Assembly (NCBI GenBank): GCA_964035545.1
Contig: OZ037766.1
Span: forward strand, 16,606,722-16,670,721
Origin: Bugula neritina
Taxonomy: Eukaryota > Animalia > Bryozoa
Direction of reading: 5' to 3'
DNA length: 64,000 nt
Shown here: positions 3,266-61,200 of the stretch, one piece after another
How positions within the stretch are numbered: position 1 is the first letter of the stretch
Layout: each line of letters starts with the position of its first letter
Program-made: the position numbers and the translations under genes
The notes under the pieces: model-generated
Seen by the model: the letters and a program-made list of their open reading frames with translations, nothing else
What the model was told of the DNA's origin: nothing
Databases searched by the model: none

Positions 3266-5221
3266 CCTTCAAGCATTTATCTAAAAAAGTTAAATTACTA
3301 AAATAAAATAAATGTTTTTATTAAACAACACTGCTGTTGCAATTAGTATGATTATTGCTAAGTTCTATGGGTTGCTAAACAAAATGCTATGATTACATAA
3401 AGAATCCTTGACAAAGTTAACTTATGCGGTAAAATATTTATACAGTATATATCTAAGTTATCATCTATGTAATGTTTGAGAGTTGTATCCCAAGATAATT
3501 TCGCATACCAAATTTTCAGCTTATGCAGATAGCGTGTTTATTTGGCATTAGAGTCCGTGGTATCATAAACTAACTTTTTAGACTTTTTCTAAAAAAGTAT
3601 TAGTAGCTTTTTTGGCACTTGCAGAGAAAAAGGCTTAGGGTCATCCTAAAGGTTTATCTCATATTGCTTGCGAAATCTTACTAAAAAGTAATAGATCTCA
3701 GGATATTGGTTTTTGAATAGGATCTTCGGTAATTTTTCTACTTGGTTCACGGACAATATTTTAAATAATGATACCCTTAACAATATTTACTTAATCATTA
3801 CTATCATCAATATCTTATCATTATATATAATCATCAGATAAAGAAACAACCACAGTCCATAATGATAATGACAATGTAAAATTAAACAGAACAGTTATAA
3901 GTCACACTTGATGTTATGTAAAAAATAAGTATAGTTACAATTTCTAGCATCAGTAAATAGACTTAGTATTACTAATAGCAATAGTAATACTAATACTTAT
4001 ACAAATAGTTATATCAATTCACTAAGCCAAATTAACTAAAAATAAACGTAACACTAATAGTTATAGTAATACTAATAGTATATTGTAATTGCTGTGGGAT
4101 GTGTGTGTTACTATATATCCATTAGGTATATGCAGCACTTGCGTATGAAACAGGACTATATTATAGTCTGAAAAGTGTTATGACATTCTCTTTGTTATGC
4201 TCAGGCTAACATTGTGAAATGCCGCATTTCTTCGGTGATGGCGCAGGATACCGCACCAGCCGCCGCAGTCCCTACCGCCAGAACTCACCAGCCAATCAAA
4301 TGACACCTTCCCTTTATAAGGAAGGCCTTTCAGCGCCGAAGAGGCCTGGCAAGCCATACGACAGGCCTATTACCACCATCTCGCTACTCCGAAACCGTTT
4401 TGACAAACTACAAGAAGAGTGGTCTGATGAAAAGGTGATGCAGGATCCAGAGTCCGTGTGTGTGCCTTTGCAACCTCTGAGATCGTCTCAGACCGCCCAA
4501 ACTCATGGCTCAAAAAGTGTTACCTGCAGAGGTCGAGAATGCTAAGAGAACTAGAGTACAATCCTATGGTAGTAGCTTTTTCTTGCCAGGCAAAATTTCT
4601 GGCAAAGCTGCTACTTTTCTGCTGGGTTCAGGGTGTACTACAAACCTCTTAAGCCGCCGATTCTTTGACACCCTCAGCATGAGAGACTGGGCCGGCCTGG
4701 CATGTTGACGGACAGGTTGTGTATTTCCTTCTATGGCATTGTTGAGCTGGCTGGCAGAGTCCGCGATCAGGCGATCAGCGAGATGTTTATCGTCAGCCAA
4801 CTCAAGGAGGACGCTATTGCCGGAATGCCATTCTTGATACAACCGACTTTAGCAAGTCGGCAGTAGTTATGGCCAGGCGAGAGCTAGCTTGTGTCGACAA
4901 GTTTGGCCCACTGGGAGTGGGGGAGGGGTGTTCAGATAGTGCGAAGCTGCACGATACCTGGATGCTCCCGGGCCACAATTCACTGCAGGATGAATTGTAG
5001 CTCGGAGTCGTGGAGGGTGCTCACAAAAAGATCCAACTTGCAAATAGCCTAAACCGGCTAGACCTGCGGGGGGGGGGGTCAATTTTGGTGCAGTGAGTAG
5101 ACCTCTTCACAGAGTCGGTGGCATTACCGGCTGGTGCCATGGTGGGCAAGTTTCACTTAGTACTAGAAGAACATGTAGGACCGTCGTTAGGTGCAATGAC
5201 GGAGGGCCCCAGTAGACCCCC

Positions 5222-5619
5222 TGAAGCGAAATTAGCGCTAGTTTGCTCAGCTATTTTAGCTATATTAAAAACGTACAAAGATAAGCTTTCTACAGCACAG
5301 CCGGTGCTCACTAAAAGACCCCTGGCACTTGGCAATAGTTGGTGCTAGTGGACTAGTTGTAATTTTAAGAGAGCAAAATAAGTAAGTCATTTATATTAAT
5401 TATATTGTTTCTTTTTTGTGGATCACAACTGTTTTTTGTTTTCATATTGTTTATTTATGTTTATGCTGATCATGTAAGTTTGAATTGCAATTTTAGTCTT
5501 GACGATGTCAATAGAAGTCCATCAGTGTCAAATGAGACCAGCCAATGTATGTTAGAATAAAATATAATAAAGGACATCAGTGAAGAATTATTGCTCAACT
5601 CGCAGCCTAGTTCACTACA
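5222..5619 (+). repeat. BEL/Pao 5' LTR with TATA-like box (~5261), internal GT-AG intron (5382-5496) and AATAAA signals (5556, 5566)
   Basis: Direct repeat of 12105-12497. Ends TG(A/T)AG...CTACA. Donor GTAAGT at 5382, branch-like CTGAT at ~5466, acceptor TTTTAG ending 5496. Confidence 0.9.
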
Positions 5620-6535
5620 GTCAAGATTATTTGTAACCAAGGCAAGATTGTCTTATTGAGCCAAGGCAAGATAATTCCTAAAGACAAGTCAAAAATAACT
5701 AAGAAAAATAATGAAGACCTGCTGGACCAGTAGAGAATTTTGGAACTGGAATTGTCCATACATACCGATAAGTTGATGTAGGGATAAAGTAAATGAATTC
5801 CGGTGATGCACCCAAAAGAGAAGTCCCTCACAGGCCAGCTAAGTCAAAGTGTTATTCAAATTATATATTCAGTTATGATGAATACAATTGCAGCTAGGAA
5901 CATTCAAGAAGTGCATTTGATGATGTGTGTATAAATTGATTAGAGTTAATAGTTTCTACATCAAGCTGGAACATTGGCTTTAGCTTTTAGCTTTTTGTAG
6001 CAAGTTTTCAACATATGTGTTTGGTCATAACATTTTTCTATATGCAAGAAATTAGGTTTTGGTATTGTTATTTGTTATTCTGTTATAGTGCAGGCTAAGT
6101 TGTAGAAAGCTTTATCTGCAAATCTTGTTGATTTGGGTGCTTTAAAATTTAAGTCAAACCTTTGCTAGTATAGGTATCCGTGCTAGGATTTTGTCAAAGC
6201 TCTCCAGAAAGCTTTCCAGTCTCAAACATAAAACAGCATTTCCTTGTTACTTTTTCATTGTCATAATACGTTGTCTCATTTTTTTTGTTTTTGTTCTTTC
6301 ATCTATATTGTGGTATCGAGCTATAAATTGGTGATTTAGCACATGCACTTAGGTTAATTTGAAAAGAGGTTCGTCTTTTCACCTTTTGTGTGTAAATGCA
6401 AAGCCTTGTAAAATTGTTTTCTTGTTATATCCGACAATATCTATTGTGATAATTTTCTTTGTGGTGGTAGCATTTTGATAATTTTGTTAATCTCTATTGA
6501 TTCCGTATAACTTTTAGTGTTAAACACTTCAATAT

Positions 6536-9500
6536 ATGAAGATGAGTGATTTATACATGGAGGCACTCAACTGCCTGTCGGTGAAACAACTCCGGAGCAA
6601 ACTAAATCACTATGGGATGCGGGCAACTGGCAACAAAAAAGAGTTAAAGCATCGACTACTCGAAAAGTTTGAAACTCACCAAACACGGGTGGAAAAAAGT
6701 ACAAATGATAAGTCTAAGGTAGAAGTAAGTTCACAAGAGTGCACACCTTTAAATACCGAAAAATGAAAAATATTCCAACCCACGTGACCACAGCAGGGCT
6801 GCAAAAGCTAAACGAAAAGCTGAATTACAAAAACTAATCAATGAAATGAACAGCTTCAGTGACGAGGACTCGTCAGACATCAAGGAACAAACTTACTACT
6901 TGCAAAGAGCTTGTGCTTATGGGAGTCATATGATGTTCGAAAAGTTACCAGCGCCTACTCCACCTGTATTTGGTAGAAATGTACTGGAATATCACGACTG
7001 GAAAGTAGCTTTTGATGGGCTGATCGGACACCTGCCTTTACAACCAAGCCAGAAATTCTACTACCTCAAGCAATATTTGAGCGTGAGAGTACTCAACGCT
7101 GTGAGTAGTTTCTTTTTAACTAACACTGAGAAAGCATACATAAAGGCACGAAACTTACTTGATGAAAGATATAGATATCCTTATTTACTCTACAGAGAAA
7201 TACAAGCAAAGCTAAAAGATTGGCCAAGGATAGCTAGCCGTGACAATGAAATTCTGCGTGATTTCTCAGACTTTCTAACCAAATGTCTCACATTAAAACA
7301 GGAAATAAAATCGTTGAACTACTTTGACAATGTTTCTGAGATTCTAGAGTTAACTCAAAAACTACCAGAATGGGTCACCAACAAATGGAACGATAGGGCG
7401 TACGATTACAGGGACGAAAATGGGGAACACCCTGACTTTGAGTGGATCGTAAAATTTCTACGAAAAGAGTTAGATAAGGCATGTGATTCTGTGTATTCAT
7501 TAGCAGCAGTAAGACAAACTACTGAATCTAATAAAAGGAAAGATATTTATACCAAGGCAATATAAGAAAGGAAGTCTACAATGATGAACAACAATTTTGA
7601 TGAGAATACCTCAGATTCAACTAAAGATATCTGTGCATACTGCAGAACAGACGGACACAATCTCCCGGAGTGCACGAGGTTTACAAGGATTTCAATGTCT
7701 GAATGACAAAATTTCATAAAAGTTAATGGATGGTGTTTTGGATGTCTCATTGAGAAACACCACTCAAAAGAGTGCAGGAAGCGTGAAACCTGTGTTATTT
7801 GTTCAAAGAAACATCCTACGGTGTTGCATCAAGAAGATCGGCAGGAGGAACATGAAGCTAATACAAAGGCTACAAAGATGGAAACTAGTTCACTCAATAC
7901 TGAATCAAAACATGTGGGAATAGACAATTCCATATATCGATACTGGTCAATGATTGTGCCAGTGTTTTTATCTAGTGAGAGCAATCCTTCAAAGGAGGTT
8001 TTAACGTATGCTTGTTGGACATGCAGTCAGACACAACATTTGGTGTTTCTGACATAATAGACAGAATTGGAGGAAGATACCAAAACACATGACTCAAGCT
8101 AAGCACCATGACTTCGAAGGAAGAACTTGTTCACAGTTATGTTTATAGTGACTTACAGATTAGAGGTTATACAGGAAAGAAGATAGTGGATCTGCCCCCT
8201 CTCTACTCTCAAGAATACATTCCAATAACGGAATCCCACATACCTACTTATGAAAATGTTAGGCAGATTAAACATCTTAGAAACGTAGCTCCTTTTATTT
8301 CTCCTAAGCTCGATCGTGGATTTGGTCTACTCATTGGCTATGATTGCTCTCAAGCACTTCTCCCTAGACAGATTGAGAGTGGGAAAAATGGTGAACCATA
8401 TGCTATAGAGACAGATTTAGGATGGAGTGTAGTTGGAACCAGCAACACTGGCCTCCAAGATAGTACATTTCATAAAGCTGACACAAAACCCATCAAGACA
8501 GTTACAAACAGCAATGTTTGTTTTAGAATTAAATATACAACTAAGGAGGTAGTTGCTGCTCAAGATATTTCAAAGATTTTGAATTAAGACTTTAAAGACA
8601 CAAATGAGCAACCGTCATCAAATTGTGGAAAATTAGACAAGGTGTGGCAAAATGATATTAGGTTCATGAAAATCATAAGCAACAACATAAAACAAGATGA
8701 GTCTGGTTACTACACAATGCCCCTACCCCTCAAAGACAAGTTCCAACTACCAAATAACAGTTGGGTCGCAGAAAAAAAATTTAACGGCCTCTTAGAGCGA
8801 TTGGAAAGAGACGAGTATAAAGAGAGATAAAGACTTTATGCAGGGTCTGGTCAACAGAGGAGAAGCAGAGCTTGTTGAAGATGGTGATTCAACTGATTTA
8901 GTATGGTATCTACCTCACCATGGTTTTTTCATCCTAAAAAACCCGATAAAGTGCGTGTGGTATGGGACTGTAGCGCAAAATGCAATGGGTTGTCTTTGAA
9001 CAATATATTACTACAAGGACCAGATTTAAACAACACACTACTTGGTGTCCTACTACGTTTTCGGCTAGGAGAAATAGCTCTAACCTGTGATATTGAAAAA
9101 ATGTTCTTCCAGTTTAGGGTACCACCCGAACATAGAGATCTGCTACGGTTTTTATGGTTCAATGAAGATGGGAAAGTATGTAATTACAGAATGAAAGTCC
9201 ATGTGTTTGGAGCTGTCAGCTCACTCTCTTGCGCAATATATGGACTTAAGAGACTCGCAATGGACTTCAGTGCTAAATACCTCAAGCACAGGAGTTTATA
9301 CAAAACAACTTCTATGTAGATGATGTTCTATTGTCAACTGACTCAGAAGAAGCTACAAAAATAGCACAGCAGTCAATAGAGATGTGTCAAAAGGCAAACA
9401 TTTGCTTGTGTAAATTCATTAGCACTAGTAAAACTGTATTGAAACAAATACCTAATTCTGAACATGCCCACGAAACACCGACTCAAGAACTACTACCAAA

Positions 9501-11909
9501 CATTAGCTCGGCTTTGGGAGTAACATGGAATATTGACAATGATGAATTTAGTTTTTGACTTGAATTACGGGATATACGTTTGAGAAGGAGAGGAATTCTC
9601 TCAACAGTTGGTTCGATATATGATCCTTTAGGGCTAATCTCACCTGTTCTCTTGCGAGCAAAGCAAATTTTGAAAGAAATTTGTGAACTAAGCAAAGAAT
9701 GGGACGATGAGCTACCAGACGACATTAGAGAAAAATGGCATAGATGGAGAATTGACGTAATTGCACTAAATGAAGTAAATTTTCCAAGATGCACAAAACC
9801 AAGGGAATTTGGAAAAGCAATTATTCAGGAGCTGCATCATTTCACCGATGCTAGTTGGAGTGGTTACGGATGTACCTCCTATTTACGTCAAATAAATGAA
9901 GAAGGAAGAGTTTTATGCTGTCTGTTAATGGCTAAAGCACGGGTTGCACCATCAAGGATTACCACAGTACCTCGCTTAGAATTACAAGCAGCGACTGTAG
10001 CCACTCGCTTGAGTAAATTACTTCGACAAGAAAAAGTCCCTACAACACATGAGATATTTTACAGTAACTCTGAGATAGTATTAGGCTATATAGCAAATGA
10101 AGCCAAAAGGTTTCACACGTATGTTGCAAATCGAGTTCAACAAATAAAAAACCACACTGACATGTCCCAATGAAAACATGTCTCAACCAAAGATAATGCG
10201 GTGGACCTAGCCTCTCTGGGAGTAACAGTCGACGAACTAAAACAGTCAATTTGGTTTCAAGGACCAAAATTTCTTCAGTCGACAACAGTCAAATACATAT
10301 CACTCACAAGTCGTGCAGACACCAAACTTATAGGAGATCCTGAAGTAAAATCTACTTACATTCATGTTTTGCAGTCCAAAAACCCAGCAAGGACAAGGCT
10401 CGTGAAAAGACTTAAAAGGTTCTCAAAGTTGCACTCAGCAGTTCGTGCAATTGAAGCACTTAGAAAAATTAATTAGGAAATATCAACAGAATGGTAAGGT
10501 ACCAAAATTAGTTCAGTCCACTAGATTACAGCAAAGCTAGAACATAAGTCATACGGGCATTTCAACAAGAAGTTTATAACAAAGAAATAAATATCTTGTT
10601 GAGCGGTAATTCGCTACCTAAGAAAAGTCGCCTAATAAGGCTAAACCCATTTATTGACAACGATGGTATTCTTAGAGTTGGTGGGAGACTTTCAAAGGCT
10701 ATTGAACTCTCTGATGAAAAAAAGAACCTCATCATCATTCCAAGAAAAAGTCATCTCACTACATTGATAATTAGAGACTGCCACGATTTACACCATCAAG
10801 GGAGAGGGATAACAATATCTTCAATCTGTGACAAAGGATATTGGGTAGTTGGTAGTACTACTGCAGTAAAATCTTTTATTTACAGTTGTGTGGTTTGTAG
10901 AAAACTACGCCATAGGCCCCAGCAACAGAAAATGGCCGAACTTCCACAAATTAGGACCGAAGCGGCAAGCCCATTTACACATACAGGAATAGACTGCTTT
11001 AGACCGTTTCAAGTGAAGAATAGAAGAAGATATTGCAAGATTTATGGAGTGATATTTACATGTTTAGCATCAAGAGCAGTCCATATTGAAATGCTTGATG
11101 ATCTCAGCTCAGATTCATTTATTAATGCCCTACGTTCTTTGATAGCAATCCGTGGGCAGGTGTCGACGTTAATCTCAGATCAAGGCACTAATTTTAAAGG
11201 AGCTAGCACTGAACTAATTAAAGCTCTCAAAGAAATGGATGATTGTGAGCTTAAAGGTTTCATCTCTAAACATATGATTGATTTCAGGTTTAACCCACCT
11301 ACAGCTTCACGTATGGGCGGAGTCTGGGAGCGCCAAATTGGGACTGTAAGAAGCATTCTGACTACCATGTTGACCCAGCCAATACACCCACCGAACAGCA
11401 CAACTACGCGAGTATTCCTTTATGAAGCAATGACTATTGTAAACAGTCGTCCACTTTCAAACAGCACGTTAAACGACTCAACTTCGCAAAAACTACTCAC
11501 TCCGAATGATATCTCAATTATGAAGACATCCGTAATAGTACTGCTGCCCGGAAAGTTTGACGAGAAATAGCCAAAAAAGAGATGGCGCTATGTTCAGAGC
11601 CTATGTGATACTTTCTGGAAACGTTGGAAAGAGGAATGCATTTCTCAATTACAAATGCGTCAGAAGTGGCTTTCACTGAAGCGAAATTTGAAGGAAGGCG
11701 ATTTGGTACTAGTCAAGGATGAAAATGAGTACCGGGGTAATTGGCCTGTTGGACTTGTGAAAGGTGTTTTCACAGAAAATGATGGGTTAGTGAGACAAGT
11801 TAAGATTGCTACAGCTGGAGCAACAGATTCCAGAGCGAAACGAATCGGTGATTGCCCGCTACTAGAAAGATCCATACCAAAAAGTGGTTTTGTTAATAGA
11901 GAGCCCTAA
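6536..11909 (+). pseudogene. Disrupted BEL/Pao gag-pol with an N-terminal SAP-like motif
   Basis: The chain of ORF fragments from 6536 to 11909 follows the order Gag-PR-RT-RH-IN. LSVKQLRSKLNHYGMRATGNKKELKHRL fits the SAP helix-loop-helix pattern. Confidence 0.9.
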
Positions 11910-12104
11910 AGATAATTAGATTTAGTCAGATGAGTAATTGTATATAAAGGCTACTTTTTAGCGATTTGTTTGTTAGATATGTTGTTCTGTCTTTATGTGT
12001 TTTGTTTTGTTCTTTTTTTTGTGTTGTAAAAAAAATTTTTTTATATATAATTTTGAAAGCTGTTCGTCAAATGTTTGAGAAATCGAAGCGATTTCTGGGG
12101 GGTG

Positions 12105-12497
12105 TGTAGCGAAATTAGCGCTAGTTTGCTCAGCTATTTTAGCTATATTAAAAACGTACTAAGATAAGCTTTCTACAGCACAGCCAGTGCTAACTAAAAG
12201 ACCCCTGGCACTTGGCAATAGTTGGTGCTAGTGGACTAGTTGTAATTTTAAGAGAGCAAAATAAGTAAGTCATTTATATTAATTATATTGTTTTTTTTGT
12301 GGATTACAACTGTTTTTTGTTTTCATAATGTTTACTTATGTTTATGCTGATCATTTAAGTTTGAATTGCAATTTTAGTCTTGACGATGCTAATAGAAGTC
12401 AATCAGTGTCAAATGAGATCAACCAACGTATGTTAGAATAAAATATAATGAAGGACATCAGTGAAGAGGTATTGCTCAACTCACAGCCTAGTTCACT
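12105..12497 (+). repeat. BEL/Pao 3' LTR, lacking the terminal ACA
   Basis: Starts TGTAGCGAAATT and ends ...GTTCACT, then runs straight into duplicated target sequence. The same intron is at 12265-12377. Confidence 0.9.
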
Positions 12498-13579
12498 GTA
12501 GGGCCATCGTTAGGTGCAATGACGAAGGGCCCCAGTAGACCCCCCATGGGCGGTAGCGGACCAGTCCCAGACCACATCGCAGACTTGTACACGGATGCCT
12601 GTGATGGCTGCACGAGTAACAGGGAATGCCTGGTGATGGCGCAGTTACTTTGTGAGTACAAGGGCGTGTTCAGCAGTGGGGACAATGACGTGGGACTGAC
12701 CAAGGCTGTTCGTCATGAAATTTCCCTGGCTGAGGGGACGGTCCCAATCCGGCAACCCATGTGCAGGTTGGGCCCGGAAAAGGTTGGTACCGCACCAGTC
12801 GCCGCAGTCACCACCGCCGGAAGTCACCAGCCAATCAAATGACACTTTCTTCTTATCAGGAGGGCCTTCCGACGCCCATCCTTATTCTACATATGGATAT
12901 AGTGTAAAACTCACTTTTTTGTACTGAACTCTGACTTGTATGCTTTGTATACTTTATGTAAACTTCTTTTGTAATTAGTCTTATAAGTATATCTGTTCAT
13001 CCAACCTTAATAACTACTCGGTTCTCTCACATAAACCTCGGAGCTAGGCTATGCACTAGCAGTCTAAGCACACAATAAAACGCATTTGTAGTAGCCAGTT
13101 AAGCTAAAACAATAGTAATAGACAGTAGTAATACTAATAATAATAGTAATAAGTAATAGTAATATTAATAGCTATACAATTACTATTACTATTAGTATTA
13201 TTACTATTATTATTTTTTGTGATTTACTTTTACAGTTTTAGTGATACTGTGTATCTGTATGGTCATAAATATTAAATTTTAAAAGAAAATTGCCGTAATT
13301 TGGTTTTCATGAACTTTAAATTCTTATGAACAGATTTAAATTCTTATGCCAATTTGGTTCAAAATTCACCACTTAGGTAGGGCGTGCCTCATATCCAAAC
13401 AAAAAAATTTCCCCCATACAAAAACATACAAAAAGTAACTTTTTGCTCTCTAGATCTTAGAAACCAATAACTATACTATACTACGAATTAGTATAGTATT
13501 ATAAATAATAATAATAATTATAAACATAATTATTATTATATTGTATTGTTACTACAACACAAGACTCTAGTTGTCCGTG

Positions 13580-14602
13580 ATGGCTGGTGACCGGAACACT
13601 CAAAGCCAACCACAACCAGGATCACAACAGTCTCAAAATGACAAAAACAAAGACTCGACCAACCCAGAATGCAAAACTTGTAACAATGTCGATTGCTATG
13701 TTACCAACACAAGGGGCCTTTCTCAAAAATTTGGTGCTAAGTGGATCCAATGTGATTTTTGTGATGATTGGTTCCATGGTACCTGCCAAAGCCTCACCAA
13801 TTCAGATGTTGCTACGCTAGACAAAATGGATGAAAAGAATGTGAAATGGTTCTGCAACACATGCCTTCCAGTCATTGAAGCTTCTCTTCAAGGCCGAGAC
13901 AGGGTGAACAACAACGGTGAAGACTCTCTTGCTCTTCACAGCCCCCACTCAAGAAAGCTGAATAAAATTGAAGACATAATGCAACAAATTAATGCAAAGA
14001 TTGGAGCAACAAACACTGCCCTTGAAGAAAGAATGACAAAACTAGAGAAATCATATGCCGACGCTGCAAAGTCAAATACTGAAAACCTGAAGAAAGGGAT
14101 GGAGATCAGCGACAGTGCTCGAAACCTGCTGAAGAAGAGTATTGAACAACGGGAGACTGAAAACAGGAAAAATAATGCCGTTCTTTATGGCATAGATGAA
14201 CAGGAAGGTAAAAGCGCACTGGAGATGATTAAAGACCTAATGACAAGTGATACTTTCCATGCAACTCCGAAACCCCTAAGAGCAATATGCTTACAGACCT
14301 CAGGACCAGTTGACAAAAACAAACCAAGGCCGATTAAAATAGAATTTCCAGACGAATATTCAAAGTGGGAATTCCTAAAAAGAACAAATGCTACACTACG
14401 TGGACGCAAGATCTACTGCAAACTTGATGAATGCAAAGAGATTCGTGACCAGCAGTATGCCCTTCGGCAAGAGATAAAGCGAATGAAAGGGGAAAACAGT
14501 GACACTGACCAAGAAACTGACTACCGGATAAGAAATATGAGAATACAGACAAAATCTCCTTCGGGGGAATGGCGATACATGACCAAACAGACCAGTGTTT
14601 AA
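13580..14602 (+). CDS. LINE ORF1 protein: PHD finger, coiled coil and RRM-like domain
   Basis: C4HC3 pattern CKTC...WIQCDFCDDWFHGTC...WFCNTC. RKNNAVLYGIDE...RPIKIEF is typical of CR1/L2 ORF1p. First ATG at 13580. Confidence 0.9.
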   Translation: MAGDRNTQSQPQPGSQQSQNDKNKDSTNPECKTCNNVDCYVTNTRGLSQKFGAKWIQCDFCDDWFHGTCQSLTNSDVATLDKMDEKNVKWFCNTCLPVIEASLQGRDRVNNNGEDSLALHSPHSRKLNKIEDIMQQINAKIGATNTALEERMTKLEKSYADAAKSNTENLKKGMEISDSARNLLKKSIEQRETENRKNNAVLYGIDEQEGKSALEMIKDLMTSDTFHATPKPLRAICLQTSGPVDKNKPRPIKIEFPDEYSKWEFLKRTNATLRGRKIYCKLDECKEIRDQQYALRQEIKRMKGENSDTDQETDYRIRNMRIQTKSPSGEWRYMTKQTSV

Positions 14603-17338
14603 AATTCTTTCTTGCCAATGTGAGATCTCTCAAAGGCAAAACTATTGAACTATCATCACAAACATGTAATTCCGACATAATCTGCCTGACTGAGACACAC
14701 ATAAATCAGATGATACCAAGTCACACCATCTTTGATTATAACAACAAAAGGATCTACAGAAAGGATCGTAATGTAAATGGGGGTGGGGGTCTTAATTGCC
14801 ATTAATGACAACCTGCGCTCTACCCAAATTAACATAGAAGATACAACTAGTGCCGGGATCATATTTGTAAGAATAGAGGAGAGCTTAATTGTCGGATGTT
14901 ACTACAGACCCCCACATGATAGAGATGTATCCATATTGAGTAGCAACCTAGAATTATTAACTCAACAGTTCCCCAATGACCACATCATCTTAGCCGGGGA
15001 TTTCAATCTCCCCCACATTAATTGGCACACTTATCAACCCAAACTGAAGGCCCAGGATAAGGTCCTTCATAACTCATTCCTATGTATGTTGAACTTCTAT
15101 AACCTAAGTCAACTAACAACCTCACCAACCCACATTCATGGCAACACGCTCGACTTACTTTGCACCAACTCCCCCCAAGACTTAACATCCCAAGACGTAA
15201 TCTTCCCAGGGCTAAGTGATCACGCCATGATAAAAGCAAATATCCGATGGAACAAAGCAAAAGACCACCATATAGTAACCTCCAAAACTGTCAAAGATTA
15301 CCACAGAGTAGATATCAACAAATTCCGGGAAGATATGCAAAGAACTAAACATGACCTAGATGAATTGGATGATGTACAGGAAATGTGGGATCATTTTTCA
15401 TCTAGTCTACATCAGGCCATATGTGACCATGTCCCAACGAAAGTACTGTCGTCTAAGCTTAAAAATGAACCTGTTTGGTTTAACAAAGAGTGTAGACGGA
15501 TATCACGTAAAGAGAGGAAAAGCTATAATCACTACAAATCAAACGGGGACTTATTCAGTTATGCGAAATACAAGGAAATCCGGAAAACAGCTAAGAAAGT
15601 CTTTAGGATGGTAAAAAGTGAATATGGTCACAATAAAATCATCCAACCACTCCTAGAAAGCAACAGTAAGCCCTTTTACCGGCACCTCAAAGGAAACTCA
15701 AATAACAAAAATCGCATAAAACTCAAAATGACTGATGGTACCCTTAATGCAGATCCAGCAAACTGTGCGGAAACCTTCAACAAATTCTTCCACTCCCAAT
15801 TCAACAGTGGGCACCAACTGACATCACTTGGTCCCAACTCAGCAAACATAGATAATCCACCAGATATCGACAGCAATGGTATTGCCAAGTTAATACAGAA
15901 CCTCAAGCCTGGAAAAGCTCCAGGTCCAGATGGCCTGAGGAAGGCAGATCTGATGGTTGATCTCCCACTAATATCCGCTTGTTTTGCGATCATATACAAA
16001 ACCTCTATGAATCAACAGAAGCTTCCCACCCAGTGGAAAGAGGCGTATGTGACCCCTATCCATAAAAGCGGTGCAGAGGATTGTGCTCAAAACTATCGAC
16101 CCATCTCACTCACTAGCATCCCATGTAAAATGGCAGAACATCTCATCCTACGTAAAATACTTGCCAACGTTGACAATGTACTGAGCACAAGACAACACGG
16201 CTTCCGCCAGGGCTTGTCCTGCGAGACCCAATTATGCGCCACTCTCCATCAGATACTGAACTATGTCGATAAACATAAGGCTGTTCACGCAGCAGTCCTA
16301 GATTTTACAAAAGCATTTGACCGGGTCCCCCATGCCCTTCTAATGGAGAAACTACGAACAATTGCACCAATGGAAGACTATCTGCTCGGATGGGTACACA
16401 ACTTCCTCCTAAACCGATCTCAGAGGGTCGTACTCGATGGCAAAAAGTCAGAACCACTGCCAGTGACGTCTGGGGTACCTCAGGGCTCTGTGCTCGGTCC
16501 CATACTGTTTCTCGTGTTCATAAATGATCTCCCTGACTGTGTTGATTGTGAAGTTGGTCTCTTCGCAGATGACACCCTCCTCTACCAGCCTGTCTCAGAT
16601 GACCAAGACAGACTAAGGTTTCAAAGGAACATAGATGCAGCAGGAAGCTGGGCTTCAAAGTGGGGTATGGAGTTCAATGTTAAAAAGAGCAAAATTATGG
16701 CATTCAAAGAGCAAGATATACCAGCACACTACACGTTAAATGGCACAGTTCTAGAACAGGTGGACAAATCAACATACCTCGGAGTGACTCTACAGGCCAA
16801 CCTGAAGTTTGATAATCATATCCAGAGCAAAATATTGCTAGCAAACAAACAACTGGGGATGATGAAAAGGGCTTTGTACTGGGCACCCGAAAAAGTGAGA
16901 CTCATGGCTTACAAATCCCTATGCCTTCCTCACCTAGACTATGTTTCTGCTGTTTGGGACCCCTATACTACAAAAATAAATTCCATCGAAGAGGTGCAAA
17001 CACGGGCAGTAAGAGCCATAGCTAACATCAAGGGTAGAAGAGGAGTGCGAGAAGCAAAAGAAAGACTGGAGCTGACCGCCCTCGATGAAAGAAGAACTCA
17101 ACGGCTAAGACTCCTTATGAGGATACTCCAAAAGGAAGAATATCACCCAGCACTCTCTGCAGCGTATGACGAACTAATAAATACCCCGGGAAGTTTTATC
17201 CAAACTAGGGCCCAAACACTAGGACAGCCAAGATCAGTCAGCACCAATAATAACTGCTATTATAACAGGTTCTTGCCACGGACAATCCGTGACCTTAAAG
17301 GGAACAATCCTTGCAAGACTAATTTACACACAGAATAA
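14569..17338 (+). CDS. LINE ORF2 (AP endonuclease plus reverse transcriptase) with one +1 frameshift in a G run at ~14779-14789
   Basis: Endonuclease motifs ANVRSL, CLTET, RKDR..GGGVLI, GDFN, LDL and SDH. RT motifs KAPGPDG, NYRPISLTS, DFTKAFD, GVPQGSVLGP and FADD. ORFs 14569-14805 and 14777-17338 join if one G is removed. Confidence 0.92.
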
Positions 17339-51600: not shown

Positions 51601-54600
51601 TAACTTTTAAGGAATTTTGAGCAAACTTTAATTTTTGGTTACAATTTTTTGATGCGTACTGAATAAAGTATAATGACCCAATTACAGCTGCCAAACTTTT
51701 GTTTATTGCCATTGTGACTATTACAATAGTTTGAAATTCCATCACCATTTATAGTTATAATAAGGATTTTGTAATTGACAATTCTTTGTTCTGAGTAATT
51801 AAAAGAAATTCATAATACTTGAAGGGTAAAAGTTATCAACTTGTAGAAAAGGAATAATAACATAAACAAGTTGACAAGATTCTTGAACATCATTTTTGGT
51901 CTAGTAATTTGTTTTTTTTTTCAGATAGAATGATTTTCTATGAATATTGTAGTTGAAATAATGTTTTCTGTTCTTCACTAATGTCATGTTGCAGATTCTA
52001 TCTAATATCTGTTTGATGAGAGATTGTAAAACTCACTGCCTTTGTCCATTGAGAATGTCTAAAACAGTAGACGCTGCTGGAGACAACAATGAACTCTCAG
52101 ATTCAAAAGTTGGTAAGTCAATTTCAATTTAGTCTATCCTCTATTTTTCAAGGAAATTTTTTCTATACTTTTAAAAGCAGTTTATTATGTTATTAGATTA
52201 TAGGTTGCATAGATCTATCAATACTTTTCAAGTCTATAATAATATCAGTAATAGTTTTATTTATTTTTTAACATATTTTTTGTTGATTGTGTTAATGAAT
52301 AACAAAAAAACATGTATTAATTTGTTAGGCATAACTAAAAATTTTCTTTGGATAAACTTGACTATTGTTAGACGCAATGCCGTGATGCAAAACAACTGTT
52401 ATATGTGTACTATTGTTCACATTTTTAAACTCTAGCAGTAACTCCTTCATTATGAAATTTGGTCAACATACTCCATGACAGCCGTTTACATACATCATAC
52501 AAACATCTCTACATATATTTAAATATGTTTTACCAATTGGTTACAGAATTAAAATCATTATCAGTAATTATAATTATAATCATAATAATTATTTAGAAAT
52601 AAACCCAATCTACTGTGTTAAATTTAAAGTTCTATTTAAGCTTCATTGGCATTGTGGTAATCCAAGACAATGTAATAATTAATTTTTATAATTTTCATTA
52701 GTATGAATATTGCTAGTTTATGTGTTATATAACTCACTTAGTTAGTTATTGTGAAAAACTCAACTCAAATTTGTAGTGTTTACATCTTTTTATATTACCA
52801 AGCAAAATTTTCATTTAAACTTCAATATGTTGTAGTGAAAGATCCTAGTTCTACTTGTCCAACAGCCGCTGCAGAAGTACTTTCTAAAGCTGTTGAAGTA
52901 AGAAATAGTTTTTGTGTTATTCTTAATTTAAATGTTTGTAGTAGTTAACCTGACAAGAAAGTAGTTACATGTTATACAATACTCAAATGTCTTTTTTGTG
53001 ACAATTTTTTATTAATATTTAGCCTATTTACTCTACTTGAATTTTTGTTGCCTTACAAGTGTGTCATGTTGAGTTTTTGTAAGCTGTGTCTGATTATTGT
53101 AGATGGTCAAGGAAAAGTGTGCTGATGAGGAAGCAAGTGGGACAGATCAGCCTAAACAGCTAAAGATTTGTCTCGTAAAAGAGTCCACAGGTGACAAATC
53201 AACAGCATCTGGTGGTAGTATTGTAACCCATCTTACATCTGGCCAGCCGTCTAGCACTACATCACTTGCGCCTCACCCAGGAATGTCCAAGGCAGAAACG
53301 AATTCAACAACATTTAGTGCTATGAACGAATTAGGAGGAAGCAAGTCTGAATCAGAACATTCTAGTACAGCGAATTTAACTGATACTATAGCTGGCCCCA
53401 ATGTCAAATGTAATGTTGACAAAAGCTCCCAATTGTTGATTGGTCATCTGCTGAAATCAGATGATAAAATTGTTTCACATGCAAATTCTGATTTAGATTT
53501 GCAAAACAATCTAGAGAAAAAAAGAGAAGATGAATCTAAATCCCCCAATGAAACTAGACATATGTTACGAAGATCATCTTCACCCAGTAGTAGTTCTAGT
53601 GTGTCTTGTAGTTCTTCAAGTAAACGATCAAGAGAGAAAGAAAGTACATTGAAAAAAAGAAGTCATAGGCCGAAAAGAGAAAGATCGCGGAGTAAAATTC
53701 GTTTGAGTCATAGAAGGTATCGATCTAAGCATACACGATATAAATCTAGAGGCAGTGAATCTAGATCTGAAAGCAGGAACTCTAGATATAAAAGCAAACA
53801 CTATAGATATAGAAACAGGTACTCTAGATCTAGAAGCAGAACATCTAGATCTCGAAGCAGGGTCGCTAGATCTAAAAGCAGGAGCTCTAGGTCTAGAAGC
53901 AGAGACTCTAGATCTGGAAGCAGAAGCTCTAAATATAGGTACAAGTATCAAAACCGAAAATCCAAATATAGAAATAGAAGATCCAGGTCTAGAAGTAGAA
54001 GACGACAGCACAGGTCACGTGGTAGATCAATTTCTTCGAGTCGCATGTCTCAATCTAGAAGTGCAAGATCTAGATCTATATCTAGTAGTTCTAGATCTAG
54101 GGGTGCCAAGTCTAGGTATAGATATAGATATCGAAAATCTAGATCGATAAGTAAATCTGCCGAATCAAGTGATAGTTCATTGTTGAGGATGGTTAAAGCG
54201 AAAAGTCCTTCTTTAGAAAGTAAACCAAAAGCACAATCTTTTGTCAATGTCAGACAAGCTAATCAAGCTTATGAAAGATCAAGTTTATCTCCATTGTCGC
54301 CGTCTGAAACTGGCATTTCCAAGTCTCCACTTGGTGATAACAAGTCCGGCTCATCTACTTTTAATTCTGTTCACAAGTCTACTATATACAAATGTGGTGC
54401 TAAAACAGTAAGTTTGAGTGCTAAGCAAGTTACGCATAAATCAACTAAAACAAGCTATTTGTTTTCTAAAAGCAAAAAATCAAATAAAGAAAGGGATTTT
54501 GATGATGACACTAGTCAATCTAACTCACCTACGTCGAAGCTAATTTCCAGCAGTTTCCCTTTTTCATTTAAAAGCACAATTTCAGACCGTTTTACCTCAC

Positions 54601-56732
54601 CGCCGGTGTTTAAATTTCATCAAGATTCTACATTTTGTCCAATCTCTTCTGAAGGACAACAATTAGCATTGCGATCATTGTCCCCAATGTCATCGGATGT
54701 AGTTTCTCAAACTGTGAAAAACGCTTGGAGATTCTATTGCGCTCGTTTCCATGATACTCAATCTTTTAGTTCTGACATTGTTCTACAAGCTCAATTAACC
54801 TATCTCAAATCTTACTCTGGATTTTTTGCCGAAGATCCTAAATTTGAACACTTATTTCCTAGTTTATTAAAGCCTTGTGACCTAAAAGATGCAATGCAGA
54901 AACACTTGAAGAAGTATTTTTTGACTCCTGAAGTTGTAATGCAAGCCAGAGCTGCCAGTGGTATAGAATCAAGTAGTATTACTGCATGGAGGCAAGAAAT
55001 GATTCAAGATATTATGCCAAGTAAAAGTAGCAATAGCAATGTTGATGCTGCAGTTGGTATCCAGTCGCTCATTCAAGCAGGCAATATTCCTCAATTATCA
55101 ATAAATGGAAACAATGTTTATGAATGTAGTCCAGTTTCTATTCAAGAAATTCCAAAGATTAAAGATTTGGGTTCGCCAAAAACACACACCAATATTTGTC
55201 CTGGTGATGTCTTTCCATCTTTTAATATGAATCGCTCGGTGGAGATACCATTCTTGAATGACAGTTCCGAATACCCTCCACCTCCAGCTTCACTCCAAAA
55301 AAATCATTTCGGAGTGAATGAAGATTTGTCACTTACAAAGTCTTCCACTCCAGAGCTTCCAGCATCTTCGATAATTGGGAAAAGTGATGGCTTCGAAAAG
55401 GAAGTCATCATGCATAATAATGCAGTTAAGAATGTTGAATGTTTAGATGGTGAATCCTTTCCCGATCAATCCATGAAATTAAAGGAGAGATCTGAAGTAA
55501 TAGAATCGATGTTAGTCAACTGTTTGTATGAGGAGGAAGAACTACTTAGTAAAGCTTCTTCTCAAAATGCTAATACTAAAGCTGACCAAGGTTCATCATC
55601 TTCTCTTCAAGTATGTCCATTGAAATTTATAGGTTTTTTTATAATAAAGCTACTTTCTTGAATTCTAGTCATAAACTAGCCTGATTAGAAATAAAACTAA
55701 TTTTTGAGAAGTTTTACCCTCCCAGTAAATGCTTTTTATGATATAGTGTGGCTATTTAATTAGTTGTACCCCGAGGTCTGATTTTTCCATTTTATTCTTT
55801 TACAGGAAGACATGTGTGTGTTCATTTCTAAAATTATTGAAGGCATTATCAGGATGACATCATTGGTAAGTCTGACATACATATGCCGTACATATAGTAT
55901 AAAATGGTTCTATTGTTCAAATTTTATTTGCAACATTTTTGAAATGCTGAATTACAATAGTGCATTTATAAGCTAGTCCAAAAATGTTTTAGACCTGGAA
56001 ATATTTTGCTGTCTATTTCGTGCACTGGATACAACAACTTAGTTGAGTCCATTGCTAATTTTAATCCTATTTTTTATACAATTATTTTATGGGTTTATGT
56101 TATACTAAACAATTTAGTTATAATCAAGGCCATGACTTTAATCAACATAATTGTGGTAAACAACATGGTGGCTATAACTCCTAATTTTGAAGCAATAACT
56201 CTCTAATACTAAAGGCAGGTCTTTACTTCTACTGTTATCATTACTACCTAAGTTTGTTCCCTGCTAAATATTTAAAAATAAACTTGTGAAACGAAATAAT
56301 TCTAGTGTTCTCTTGGGTAAATTTAGGGATTAAAGTGAGCGTATTTTTAATCAATAAGTTTTAAAAATTAATCTGACTTTCAAACTGCTGGTTGACCATT
56401 TTCACTTAATTAGCCAAATAACATTTGCAATTCTATTAGTAAAACATTACATATTTAAATTTTATTGGTTTTTTATGTTGCGTGAAACAGTAAGGATACT
56501 AATATTGTAGTTGGAAGAATCGGAGCTGAGAAAAGAGCAGCAGTTAATGCATACTCGTATGGTAACGTCAAGTGGACATATGCTCATAAGAATGGCGCAA
56601 TGTCAACTCAACAATCCCCAGATGTTGGCATCAAATTTTCCAGCAGCTGACGCTGAAGCAATAAATATGTTGGCAGCAATTGATGAGCGTGTCATTGAGC
56701 TAATTGCTGGTACACCCCTACTTAACAGCTAA
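42673..56732 (+). CDS. Large (~1677 aa) protein with four U1/matrin-type zinc fingers and an Arg/Ser-rich domain; probably a nuclear RNA-binding factor
   Basis: 22 GT-AG exons in consistent phase: 42673-42694, 43201-43573, 43917-43962, 44408-44462, 45267-46063, 46594-46701, 46961-47029, 47566-47610, 47912-47953, 48204-48278, 48441-48483, 48867-48913, 49166-49243, 49783-49863, 50729-50779, 51044-51085, 51370-51459, 51995-52112, 52836-52897, 53103-55610, 55806-55865, 56511-56732. Fingers are CSVC..HIETLSH, CELC..HVKSEAH, CKIC..HVESPHH and CEIC..HLASAEH. The RS tract is at ~53620-54150. Confidence 0.8.
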
Positions 56733-58297: not shown

Positions 58298-61200
58298 CTA
58301 CAGCTGAAACCATGTGCTCCTGAAATAAATTGTTTTTTAAGAAGCATTTTTGTTGCAAGTAAGAATTAATTCATAGTTTAAAGTAACCAAACATATTTAA
58401 ATATCATCTGCACATATATTAAATAACAATACTTGGGGTCGTTAAACTGCAGAATTTCAACTAATGATCCCTGAAATATTTGAGGTCGTCTCACTGGAAT
58501 TTGGTCATTTAAACGGGGAGCGTCTATCTGGAATGACACTATAAAAGTTTGCAAATTATTTATAAATGATTCAAAATTTTCATAACCAATTAACTGCAGT
58601 AGATGTAGAAGTGTTTTCATGAACTGATATATTTATTTCAACACATGATGAGATCCACACTAGTCAATGCATAAATATTTTAAATGCACAATATAACTTG
58701 AAAAGGTTTGAAGTTAAGAACAATTAGCTTTAAAGGTATATTACATAAATACAAAGATCAAAACTGCTGTCGTTTTGTACATTGATAGTTTCATATACAA
58801 AATGGGCATTTCGTACACAAAATGAATAAAAAATTAAACTCCAAATTCCAAGCCCCATACATCAAATAAAAAATTATAAACATCAAAAAATATGTGTTTT
58901 ATGTTGATTTGTGATATTATTTCAGCTATCGTGAAAAGACAGAACGTGCTCGAGTTAGTTGATAAACGTAAGAGGCCGAAGCCGTGATTTATTACCACAA
59001 TATATATACACGAAAATACTAAAACTATTACAATAAGTGATACAATTAATTATTAAGATTATGACAAAAAATAGTAAAATAATAAAATAACAAATTAGAA
59101 ATAAATGTTTACATGAACACCGAACATCTCCCACAGAATAGAAAAAAGCTATTTAGATATGATTGTTTTAAGAGGGCACATAGTCTGCCATCCAACTAGG
59201 TGGCTTCCGTTCTCTGGTTGAACGTCTTAGATTGTCGCTATGATTGGCGCTCTCGGTGGTGTCAACCTGGGTACTACTAGCGTTTTGTTTAGGATCCTTT
59301 GGTGTCTCAGGACTCGCTGGCTCCGTGACGAGTGGTCTGATGTCTCGCCGGTTTCTCCGAAAGAGGTTGTTGTTAAGTTGTATGGCATAGGCTCTGCTAC
59401 TCAATTGTTTGTTAATTTGCGCCTCCTGCCATTTTCTCCGGTGCTGACTCCAGTCTCGAACCAAAACTGGTTGCCCTTCTTTCAGCACTGCCAAATCTCT
59501 TGCACCGTCATTGCATCTCTGCTGCAGTTTTTCATTGCGGCCCTGCTTTTCCCACCAACCTTGGTTGTTCTCTGTTTCTGGCCGAACTTGTGGGAGTACT
59601 GACCTGGTGGGTCTTCCGATAAGTTGCTGAATTGGGCTGGCCGTCAGGCCTTCTTTGGTGGTGTTGAGATGTTCCAGTAACGCAAGTTCGGGCTCTTCAC
59701 ATCTGCGGAGTATACGTTTGGCTATCTTCACAGCAGACTCTGCCTTCCCATTGGACTGAGGATGATATGGAGAGCTGGTGGTGTGTGTGAAATTCCATGA
59801 TTGGCTGAAAGTGGAAAACTGGTGCGAGGTAAACTGTGGTCCGTTGTCAGTGTGAACCTGTCTGGGTATTCCCAGGCGTCCAAAACAGCGCTTTATGGAG
59901 TTGATAACAGCCTCTGCTGTTTGGTTGTCCAGTCGGTCATATTCAAGGTAGTCAGTCGTATAGTCAACAATAGTAATGTAGTGAGTGTGATTGTATTCAA
60001 ACAAGTCAATTCCTACTTTGGTCCAGGGTTGTTGGGGAACTGTGTGGAGTAAAAGTGTTTCCTTCTGTTGCCGGGGAGCATCCAGTTGACATTGTCGACA
60101 GTTAGCAATATTGTTTTTGATGTCATTGGTGATGCCAAGCCAAAACACTGTGTGGCGGGCACGTCTTAGTGTGGAGTTAATCCCATTATGGCCGGTGTGA
60201 AGTAGTTGGAGAAACTTTCTCTGGAGTGTCTTTGGAATAATGGCTCGTAGTCCTTTGTAAACAATGCCATTGTCAATAGATAGTTCGTCCTGAAAGTGTT
60301 TGTACTTGTCGTGAGTTGTGCAGTTGGCAATGTTCCAGTCATGTTTAATAAGGTTTGTCAGTGTCATAAGTTCATTGTCCTGTGCAGTAGCAGTCCTAAT
60401 GTTGTCAATTAAGTCGTCACAAACAGGAGCATCATTATTTTGAGAGTCAATGTGAAAAATGTGTTCTGGTAGTTGTTGATAGTTGGGGGAGTCAAAGTAT
60501 GAGTCTCTTGAGAGTAAGTCAGCCGTGATCTGTTCAGCACCCTTTTGCCAAGTTACCTTAATGTTGGGGTATCTTTGTAAGTGAAGAAGCATAGCCTGCA
60601 ACCTCCGAGATGCCTTATGAATGGATTTCCTGAAAATAGATACAAGGGGTTTGTGGTCAGTTTGGATAGTGACAGCATGGTGACCAAAGATATACTGGTC
60701 AAAGCGTTCAGTGCCAAACACTATGGCAAGGCACTCAAGCTCTAGTGGCACATAGTTCTGTTCCGATTTTGTTAAACTGCGAGATGCATATGCTACAGGC
60801 TTGCCTCCTTGCATGAGTGTTGCACCCACACCAGCATTTGAAGCGTCAGTTTGTATAGTTACTGGCTTGTTGCAGTCAAAGTATTGTAGAGTTTCTGAGT
60901 CAGTTAGTAAGGTCTTCAGTCTATTAAAAGCGTTCATTTGGTCGTCAGTCCAGTGAAAGTCTTGAGCATTGTCTTGTGTCAGTAAACGTCGTAATGGTTC
61001 AGATTCCGATGCTAGGTTGCTAATAAATTTTGACATGTATGTGATGTGACCAAGGAATCGTTTTACTCCCTGTGGAGATGAGGGAGGTTTCATCTTAAGA
61101 ATGGCTTTTACTTTGTTAGGATCTGGTTTAAGTCCATTAGTTGTCAGTATGTGTCCAATGTAAGGTAGTTCGTCCTGAAGGAAGCGGGATTTTTCCTTGT

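What the first reader, a model, noticed from the sequence alone, without database searches (positions are those of the whole stretch)
5376..5632. BEL/Pao element appears to build its own RT primer by splicing an intron in its LTR
Seen: after the 5' LTR end (..CTACA, 5619) there is no TGG tRNA-type PBS; the next bases are GTCAAGATTATTT (5620-5632). The LTR contains a canonical intron 5382-5496 (GTAAGT...CTGAT...TTTTAG), conserved in the 3' LTR (12265-12377). Joining the exons gives AAATAA|TCTTGAC (5376-5381 + 5497-5503), an exact 13-nt reverse complement of 5620-5632. Its 3' C pairs with the first base after the LTR, where a primer 3'-OH must sit. Unspliced RNA gives only a 10-bp helix containing a G-U pair. 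Known: Tf1/sushi-group Gypsy elements self-prime using the first ~11 nt of the transcript annealed at the PBS and cleaved, whereas BEL/Pao elements are usually described as tRNA-primed. Inference: this is tRNA-independent self-priming in a BEL lineage, where the primer is completed only after splicing. With the TATA-like box at ~5261 the primer would be a ~100-nt spliced 5' fragment. I am not aware of this being described, but I cannot check the literature.
Basis: partly seen in the sequence, partly recalled or inferred. Interest (0 to 1): 0.93.

Follow-up and report, generated by a model that had tools for sequence, protein, structure and literature searches.

The report
Spliced self-primer in BEL/Pao retrotransposons
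A dead BEL/Pao retrotransposon copy shows a design shared by relatives from bryozoans to fish: removing an intron inside the long terminal repeat joins two short RNA pieces into the exact complement of the primer site, so these elements most likely prime their own reverse transcription instead of borrowing a host tRNA.

Summary
The element (5222-12500) is a degenerate BEL/Pao copy. Its LTR carries a GT-AG intron (5382-5496). Joining the exons gives a 13-nt exact complement of 5620-5632, ending at the first base after the LTR.

- The intron is real. At least five solo LTRs elsewhere in this genome lack exactly these bases and have 5-bp target duplications.
- Six loci carry spliced exon 1 plus the junction fused directly to the reverse complement of the LTR end. 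This shows that DNA synthesis started from the junction:primer-site duplex.
- The same layout occurs in 9 of 9 BEL/Pao elements tested: two Watersipora elements, a hemichordate, a starfish, a sea urchin, a teleost, two metagenome contigs and this window. The first 10 pairs are kept throughout, and seven of them vary by compensatory changes.

No tRNA-type site is present, and no paper in the searchable library describes this. The ICTV profile calls the family tRNA-primed.

Splicing in RNA, the transcription start and the cleavage step therefore remain inferred.

First-stage readers flagged the same idea at several other places in this genome.

The parts
5222..5619 (+). 5' LTR (TGAAG...CACTACA), 398 bp
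   Evidence: Alignment with the 3' LTR. Borders are fixed by solo copies with 5-bp target duplications.
5261..5270 (+). TATA-like box. The start site it implies, near 5290-5300, is inferred and was not tested.
   Evidence: Sequence. Canonical TATA boxes sit 130-180 nt upstream of the donors in the Watersipora relatives.
5376..5381 (+). Last 6 bases of LTR exon 1 (AAATAA). This is the 5' half of the primer complement.
5382..5496 (+). 115-nt GT-AG intron inside the R part of the LTR (GTAAGT ... CTGAT ... TTTTAG)
   Evidence: Sequence. The intron is conserved across subfamilies of 76-95% identity. Exactly these bases are missing in intron-less integrated LTRs L039, L040, L044, L050, L055 and L059.
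5497..5503 (+). First 7 bases of LTR exon 2 (TCTTGAC). This is the 3' half of the primer complement. The predicted cleavage that leaves a 3'-OH falls after C5503.
   Evidence: In the fossils this C is followed directly by the complement of the LTR end.
5556..5571 (+). Two AATAAA signals (5556-5561 and 5566-5571). They place the intron in R and leave a short U5.
   Evidence: Sequence. Relatives have the same order: acceptor, then AATAAA, then the LTR end.
5620..5632 (+). Primer-binding position (GTCAAGATTATTT). It abuts the LTR, has no TGG, and is the exact complement of the spliced junction.
   Evidence: It is conserved in the other copies that keep internal sequence: L006, L011, L025, L027 and L055.
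5633..12096 (+). Internal region with broken gag-pol frames: DUF1759 at 6846-7565, Peptidase_A17 at 9580-10173, integrase at 10596-11570, DUF5641 at 11655-11909
12097..12104 (+). Polypurine-like run GGGGGGTG just before the 3' LTR
   Evidence: Other 3' LTR copies (L008, L017) and relative L092 have the same feature.
12105..12500 (+). 3' LTR with the same intron at 12265-12377. The last 4 bases are ambiguous: CACTGTA here against CACTACA in the 5' LTR.

Best explanation
Active members of this BEL/Pao lineage prime minus-strand DNA synthesis with their own transcript, and splicing creates the primer sequence.

The proposed steps are:
1. The LTR-derived 5' leader (R) contains a spliceosomal intron.
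2. Removing it joins the last 3-6 bases of exon 1 to the first 5-7 bases of exon 2.
3. The joined stretch pairs with the 10-13 bases that directly follow the 5' LTR.
4. A cut after the last paired base (C5503 here, in a conserved AC|G context) leaves a 3'-OH opposite the first base after the LTR. By analogy with Tf1, the element's own RNase H would make this cut.
5. Reverse transcriptase extends that end into U5.

Shown here:
- The complementarity, its anchoring at the LTR boundary, and its covariation across families.
- Precise removal of the intron in integrated copies.
- DNA fossils in which synthesis began at the end of the junction.

Inferred:
- Splicing of the RNA in vivo in the relevant cells.
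- The cut and the enzyme that makes it.
- The length of the primer.
- Whether priming is in cis or from a spliced partner RNA.
- That the intron protects DNA intermediates from snap-back.

The window copy is an old, inactive example.
For: **1. Exact complement.** The 13-nt complement is anchored at the LTR boundary. It was reached in at most 1 of 3000 shuffles.

**2. Intron-less LTR copies.** Five are solo LTRs with 5-bp target duplications (L039, L040, L044, L050, L059) and L055 is a sixth. They come from several subfamilies and lack exactly the GT..AG interval.

**3. Fossil junctions.** Six loci (L055, L025, L047, L053, L057, L008) carry exon 1 plus the junction followed at once by the reverse complement of the LTR end.
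- Three of them are bounded by 5-bp target duplications.
- In L025 and L057 the forward LTR keeps its intron while the inverted arm is spliced. This is what is expected if a spliced RNA sat on the primer site of a template that kept the intron.

**4. Same layout in 9 of 9 BEL/Pao elements**:

| Element | Source | Anchored helix |
|---|---|---|
| L096 | Watersipora | 12 bp |
| L095 | Watersipora | 10 bp |
| L098 | Glandiceps | 10 bp |
| L101 | Patiria | 10 bp |
| L099 | Astyanax | 10 bp |
| L097 | Lytechinus | 10 bp, with a terminal G-U |
| L100 | metagenome contig | 11 bp |
| L102 | metagenome contig | 10 bp |

- In the eight elements tabulated before L102 was fetched, pairs 1-10 are Watson-Crick or G-U in all eight. 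Seven of those ten pairs show two to four pair types.
- In L102 exon 2 gives only 5 bases, so unspliced RNA could form only 6 bp.

**5. Independent splice-site ranking.** Donors picked by complementarity rank 1st-3rd of 24-110 GT sites when scored on intron-side bases alone. This holds in 8 of 9 elements.

**6. No tRNA signal.**
- There is no TGG after the LTR.
- The 13-mer sits in no tRNA.
- Rfam finds nothing in the region.
- The site differs between families while its partner changes with it, which a conserved host tRNA cannot explain.
Against: - No RNA evidence.
- Minimum-energy folds of the spliced leader contain the helix in only 2 of 6 elements.
- A capped primer of about 100 nt has no obvious stop signal for plus-strand strong-stop synthesis.
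- Keeping the intron in progeny requires that the templating copy of R stays unspliced. This means differential splicing or priming in trans, and neither was shown.
- The inverted arms of the fossils reach LTR base 1, beyond any plausible start site. A further snap-back or a DNA-level template switch must therefore be assumed.
- Taken alone, L095 and L102 are not significant in the any-GT-AG shuffle test (82/1500 and 138/1000).
- L098 has a weak donor.
Confidence: 0.72

Rival explanations
1. Self-priming occurs, but from unspliced RNA. Exon 2's first bases, plus the AG of the acceptor, pair with the primer site for 6-10 bp. The intron is only an ordinary leader intron, and the exon-1 match adds nothing.
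For: Exon 2 alone gives 5-7 anchored pairs in every element, and the intron's terminal AG often mimics the exon's terminal AG. Unspliced runs are therefore 8-10 bp in most elements (worked out). Tf1 manages with 11 bp (own knowledge).
Against: - The spliced helix is longer in 9 of 9 elements.
- Every position where exon 1 and the intron end differ matches in the spliced form.
- L102 would have only 6 bp if unspliced.
- The fossils contain the spliced junction, never the intron end, next to the complement of U5.
Confidence: 0.1
2. The junction:primer-site helix is functional but is not the primer. It might mask the site in spliced mRNA, or help packaging or dimerisation. Under this reading a host RNA, such as a tRNA fragment, primes on the unspliced genome.
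For: The ICTV profile states that Belpaoviridae are primed by host tRNA-Arg or tRNA-Gly (PMC8742986). No biochemical data exist for these elements. The host's full tRNA set could not be examined.
Against: - The helix always ends exactly at the LTR boundary, which is the place fixed by the primer's 3' end.
- The site lacks TGG and differs between families in step with the junction.
- The fossils show exon 1, not tRNA sequence, copied next to the site.
- The 13-mer lies in no tRNA.
Confidence: 0.1
3. The match is chance, or a by-product of a low-complexity, AT-rich LTR.
For: The window's helix is AT-rich. Long LTRs give 10-nt split matches in 5-14% of shuffles (L095 and L102).
Against: - Shuffle counts were 1/3000 and 0/1500 for the window, 7/1500 for L096, 20/1500 for L098, 11/1500 for L099, 0/1000 for L100 and 9/1000 for L101.
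- The architecture is the same in all nine elements.
- The best independent splice sites coincide with the sites picked by complementarity.
Confidence: 0.02

Closest known systems
Tf1/sushi-group self-priming (Ty3/Gypsy; Levin laboratory work, cited in PMC5443660 and PMC3601003; the details given here are from my own knowledge)
   Same: - The primer is the element's own transcript, not a tRNA.
- It pairs with the bases that abut the 5' LTR.
- A cut at the end of the duplex must free a 3'-OH.
- The helix length is similar: 11 bp in Tf1, 10-13 bp here.
   Different: - The superfamily is different (BEL/Pao).
- The pairing bases are not the first bases of the transcript. By inference they lie about 90-150 nt in.
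- In the DNA they are split by a 55-402-nt intron, so the primer sequence exists only after splicing.
tRNA-primed BEL/Pao as described by ICTV (PMC8742986)
   Same: The gene content is the same (DUF1759 gag, Pao peptidase/RT, integrase, DUF5641). So are the TGT..ACA LTR ends, the polypurine tract and the 5-bp target duplication.
   Different: None of the nine elements examined has an 18-nt tRNA-complementary site or a TGG. The site is complementary to the element's own spliced LTR.
Read-through of the tRNA primer, and snap-back self-priming of strong-stop DNA, in retroviruses (snap-back is reviewed in PMC6088434, which I listed but did not read in detail; the rest is own knowledge)
   Same: The palindromic 'LTR - primer site - inverted exon 1' units look like plus-strand synthesis that ran on into the primer and then folded back.
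   Different: The sequence copied is the element's own spliced leader rather than a tRNA. The products were integrated with normal target duplications.
Retroviruses with the major splice donor inside R (own recollection: deltaretroviruses and foamy viruses; not checked here)
   Same: A splice donor lies inside the LTR-derived leader.
   Different: Here the acceptor also lies inside the LTR, and the exon junction itself is the functional sequence.

Membership tests
BEL/Pao (Belpaoviridae) | Pao-type peptidase/RT domain, DUF1759 gag, integrase and DUF5641, in that order between LTRs | tested here: met
   Pfam hits in order along 6846-11909. The frames are broken.
BEL/Pao (Belpaoviridae) | Priming by a host tRNA through an 18-nt site complementary to tRNA-Arg or tRNA-Gly (ICTV profile) | tested here: not met
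   There is no TGG after the LTR, the 13-mer lies in no tRNA, and the site is complementary to the element's own spliced LTR. The host's full tRNA set was not available.
Self-priming LTR retrotransposon (Tf1 type) | The element's own transcript is complementary to the bases abutting the 5' LTR | tested here: met
   13 nt here and 10-12 nt in eight relatives, always anchored at the LTR boundary and only after intron removal.
Self-priming LTR retrotransposon (Tf1 type) | The pairing bases are the first bases of the transcript | tested here: inconclusive
   TATA boxes lie 110-180 nt upstream of the donors, which suggests that they are not. The start site was not mapped.
Self-priming LTR retrotransposon (Tf1 type) | RNase H cut at the end of the duplex frees the primer 3'-OH | not testable with these tools
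   There is only indirect support. AC|G is conserved at the predicted cut, and DNA fossils begin exactly there.
Self-priming LTR retrotransposon (Tf1 type) | Membership of the Tf1/sushi clade of Ty3/Gypsy | tested here: not met
   The domains are BEL/Pao.
Spliceosomal intron | GT..AG borders, a pyrimidine tract and precise removal | tested here: met
   GTAAGT and TTTTAG borders. Removal is precise in six integrated copies. Donors rank top on intron-side consensus.
Spliceosomal intron | Spliced reads in RNA | not tested

The most novel reading that the evidence does not exclude
Splice-junction self-priming is not a quirk of one bryozoan family. It is the normal, ancient way in which a large BEL/Pao clade starts reverse transcription, in lophotrochozoans, echinoderms, hemichordates and teleosts. 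That would contradict the textbook description of the family as tRNA-primed. The LTR intron would then serve as a switch. The primer exists only in RNA that has passed through the spliceosome, and the two halves stay apart in DNA intermediates, which would otherwise snap back. The palindromic by-products in this genome show that such snap-back does happen.
Probability: 0.55. Interest if true: 0.92.

Novelty: new variant of a known kind. Interest (0 to 1): 0.88.

Why it matters
How reverse transcription is primed is a defining trait of every retroelement family. Only two solutions are established for LTR elements: a host tRNA, or the transcript's own 5' end in the Tf1/sushi group.

A primer sequence that is written in two pieces and assembled by the spliceosome would be a third solution. 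It would:
- tie retrotransposition to nuclear RNA processing;
- explain why automated tRNA-site searches fail on many BEL/Pao elements;
- correct the description of Belpaoviridae;
- give a simple sequence rule for annotating these elements and predicting which copies are competent, namely that the junction complement abuts the LTR.

The integrated palindromic by-products also offer a rare natural record of a reverse-transcription intermediate.

Tried and rejected
**Steps that were blocked**
- More genome sequence. The other places flagged by first readers could therefore not be checked.

**Searches that led nowhere**
- L092 (63% identical integrase, ENA contig) is the closest public relative. 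It has the same polypurine tract, the same donor/acceptor layout and the same TCTTGAC exon-2 start. Its 5' LTR and primer site are not on the contig.
- The site predicted for L092, GTCAAGACTATTAG, occurs only at chance level in this genome.
- Gag-based searches for the 5' part gave contigs that stop short of the site.
- Logan contig L091 holds only 30 nt of LTR.

**tRNA rival**
- ARAGORN found no tRNA in the 18 loci that carry the 13-mer.
- It also found none in the roughly 350 kb of this genome that I held.
- The full tRNA set was never compared.

**Other negative or weak results**
- Rfam gave no match in 5100-6000.
- Minimum-energy folding of the spliced leaders was equivocal: the helix appeared in 2 of 6.

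**Literature**
None found a paper on BEL/Pao self-priming or on an intron inside an LTR that serves priming. The BEL/Pao survey PMC3118150 does not mention primer sites at all.

**Joined exon sequence**
I sent no joined exon sequence to any search tool. The one exception is the 13-mer, which equals window:5620-5632 on the minus strand. Joined leaders were built only inside my own scripts, for counting pairs and for folding.

**Rejected ideas**
- Trans-spliced leader acceptor: the complement needs the cis exon 1.
- Start site at the junction: this would give a first exon of only 6-7 nt.

Full report
**The observation**

- AAATAA is at 5376-5381 and GTAAGT starts at 5382.
- TTTTAG ends at 5496, and TCTTGAC is at 5497-5503.
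- The LTR ends CACTACA at 5619, and GTCAAGATTATTT is at 5620-5632.
- The joined exons are the exact reverse complement of those 13 bases. The 3' C of the joined stretch faces the first base after the LTR.

The 5' LTR is 5222-5619. The 3' LTR begins at 12105 after a GGGGGGTG run and carries the same intron at 12265-12377. The LTRs are about 95% identical and the internal frames are broken, so this copy is old and dead. Pfam finds DUF1759, Peptidase_A17, Integrase_H2C2 and DUF5641 in order, which makes it BEL/Pao. An anchored complement this long across any GT..AG split arose in 1 of 3000 and 0 of 1500 dinucleotide shuffles.

**The family in this genome**

The genome is 216 Mb and holds at least 48 matches to the LTR.
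- Most are solo LTRs with TG..CA ends and 5-bp target duplications, which fixes the LTR borders.
- Donor, acceptor and both junction halves are kept across subfamilies that are only 76-95% identical.
- The few copies that keep internal sequence (L006, L011, L025, L027, L055) have the same bases after the LTR, or one change.
- Within this family there is therefore conservation but no covariation.

**The intron is real**

I searched the genome for the 13-mer, which is the same as window:5620-5632 read on the minus strand. It gave 33 hits against 39 for the reversed control, so the word is not enriched overall. The context of the hits is what matters.
- Six are LTR copies in which exon 1 runs straight into TCTTGAC with the intron missing to the base: L039, L040, L044, L050, L055 and L059.
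- Five of these are solo LTRs. Four have clean 5-bp target duplications, and L044's is only approximate.
- They belong to more than one subfamily.
- Spliced transcripts of this family were therefore reverse-transcribed and integrated repeatedly.

**Fossils of the priming duplex**

Six further loci (L055, L025, L047, L053, L057, L008) contain exon 1 and the spliced junction followed at once by TGTAGTGAAC.., the reverse complement of the LTR end.
- Read on the other strand, each is 'LTR, primer site, inverted exon 1'.
- L055, L025 and L047 are complete units bounded by 5-bp target duplications (ATTAT, ATTAG, GCAAG). Their two arms are 97% identical.
- In L025 and L057 the forward LTR still has its intron while the inverted arm is spliced.

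The simplest reading is that a spliced leader RNA sat on the primer site, and that plus-strand synthesis ran on into it. This would be the counterpart of read-through into a tRNA primer. The arms reach LTR base 1, beyond any likely start site, so a later fold-back on the element's own exon 1, or a DNA-level template switch at the 13-nt inverted repeat, must be added. That part is inference. Either way, DNA synthesis started exactly at the end of the junction:site duplex.

**Relatives elsewhere**

The window's integrase piece finds one close public relative, P0121 at 63% identity. Its contig L092 shows the same polypurine tract, a GTACGT donor and an acceptor followed by TCTTGAC, but it lacks the 5' end.

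I then took BEL/Pao proteins on long public contigs and cut out whole elements. In every one an intron inside the LTR, once removed, yields the complement of the bases that abut the LTR.

| Element | Source | Anchored helix |
|---|---|---|
| L096 | Watersipora | 12 bp |
| L095 | Watersipora | 10 bp |
| L098 | Glandiceps (hemichordate) | 10 bp |
| L099 | Astyanax (teleost) | 10 bp |
| L097 | Lytechinus (sea urchin) | 10 bp with a terminal G-U |
| L101 | Patiria (starfish) | 10 bp |
| L100 | metagenome contig | 11 bp |
| L102 | metagenome contig | 10 bp |

- In the eight elements tabulated before L102 was fetched, pairs 1-10 are all Watson-Crick or G-U. Seven of the ten pairs show two to four pair types.
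- L098 and L101 differ at pair 3 by a single compensatory change.
- Exon 2 supplies 5, 6 or 7 of the pairs, so the helix truly spans the junction. In L102 unspliced RNA could make only 6 bp.
- The base after the helix is always G after AC.
- Shuffle counts are 7/1500, 82/1500, 20/1500, 11/1500, 0/1000, 9/1000 and 138/1000 for L096, L095, L098, L099, L100, L101 and L102.
- Scored on intron-side bases only, the donors chosen by complementarity rank 1st-3rd of 24-110 GT sites in 8 of 9 elements.
- In each element the acceptor lies 59-176 nt before the LTR end and upstream of an AATAAA, so the intron sits in R.

**Rivals**

- A host tRNA is unlikely.
  - There is no TGG after the LTR.
  - The 13-mer lies in no tRNA.
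  - Rfam finds nothing.
  - The site changes between families together with its partner.
- Unspliced self-priming is possible in principle, with 8-10 bp in most elements. Against it, every base that tells the two forms apart favours the spliced form, and the fossils carry the junction.
- A structural role without priming does not explain why the helix always ends at the LTR boundary.

**What remains open**

- I have no RNA data, no start site and no proof of the cut.
- Folding predicts the helix in only 2 of 6 leaders.
- The intron must survive in the templating copy of R, which calls for differential splicing or priming in trans.
- A long primer poses a problem for the second strand transfer. 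The palindromic by-products may be the visible cost of that.

**Literature**

- The ICTV profile states that Belpaoviridae are primed by host tRNA (PMC8742986).
- The main survey of the family never mentions primer sites or introns (PMC3118150).
- Six of the eight searches I ran looked for BEL/Pao self-priming or a priming role for an LTR intron, and none found it.
- Self-priming as such is known from Tf1/sushi elements, so I class this as a new variant of a known kind.

**Earlier notes of this scan**

First readers flagged the same idea at several other places in this genome. I could not fetch those places, so the support given here comes from other DNA.

**Handling of joined sequence**

Joins were made only inside scripts, for pair counts and folds.

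Noticed in passing
window 5175-5221 and 12497-12544: The element is flanked by a 47-nt direct duplication (44 of 47 identical) instead of the family's usual 5-bp target duplication. The last four bases of the 3' LTR are either replaced or mutated (CACTGTA instead of CACTACA). This suggests an aberrant insertion, or recombination between two nearby insertions.
   Followed up: partly
window 13571-17338 (+), and probably upstream of 5175: The BEL element sits inside a LINE-like element. Its ORFs have a PHD finger, an endonuclease/exonuclease/phosphatase domain and RVT_1.
   Followed up: partly
window 58895-63395 (-): A young Ty3/Gypsy-type element has identical 232-bp LTRs and an intact 1305-aa pol ORF. 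Its primer site, TGGTGCCCCGAG.., is of the tRNA type and lies next to its 5' LTR. It serves as an internal contrast to the BEL design.
   Followed up: partly
L055:1367-1776, L025:1501-1990, L047:1346-1566: Palindromic units made of 'LTR, primer site, inverted spliced exon 1 back to LTR base 1' were integrated with 5-bp target duplications. Their arms are 97% identical. They seem to be dead-end products of reverse transcription that integrase could still insert, because both ends mimic the LTR's left end.
   Followed up: yes
L008 (G000:C1:15966902-15967562, minus strand): A rearranged element in which pol is cut off after the Pao peptidase domain. The break is joined to LTR exon 1, the junction (one base changed), 7 bases of inverted LTR end, and then the normal 3' untranslated part, polypurine run and 3' LTR.
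   Followed up: partly
L095-L102 and window 5497-5510: The predicted cut site is conserved as AC|G, most often AC|GGTG, and the first two bases after every LTR are GT. This holds from bryozoans to fish. It may be a recognition signal for the cut.
   Followed up: partly
L100:140-330 and 6958-7142: In this metagenome contig the 3' LTR is followed again by the primer site and leader. The arrangement is either tandem or derived from a circle.
   Followed up: no
whole genome: The genome holds many apparently intact BEL/Pao copies in several families, with open frames of 1900-2123 aa. Several loci have identical domain-match scores and open-frame lengths, so BEL/Pao may still be active here. The best named protein matches are from the bryozoan Watersipora, and one related ENA contig is labelled BRYA16, so the host is probably a bryozoan.
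   Followed up: partly
window 53103-55661 (+): An 852-aa ORF has no Pfam match.
   Followed up: no
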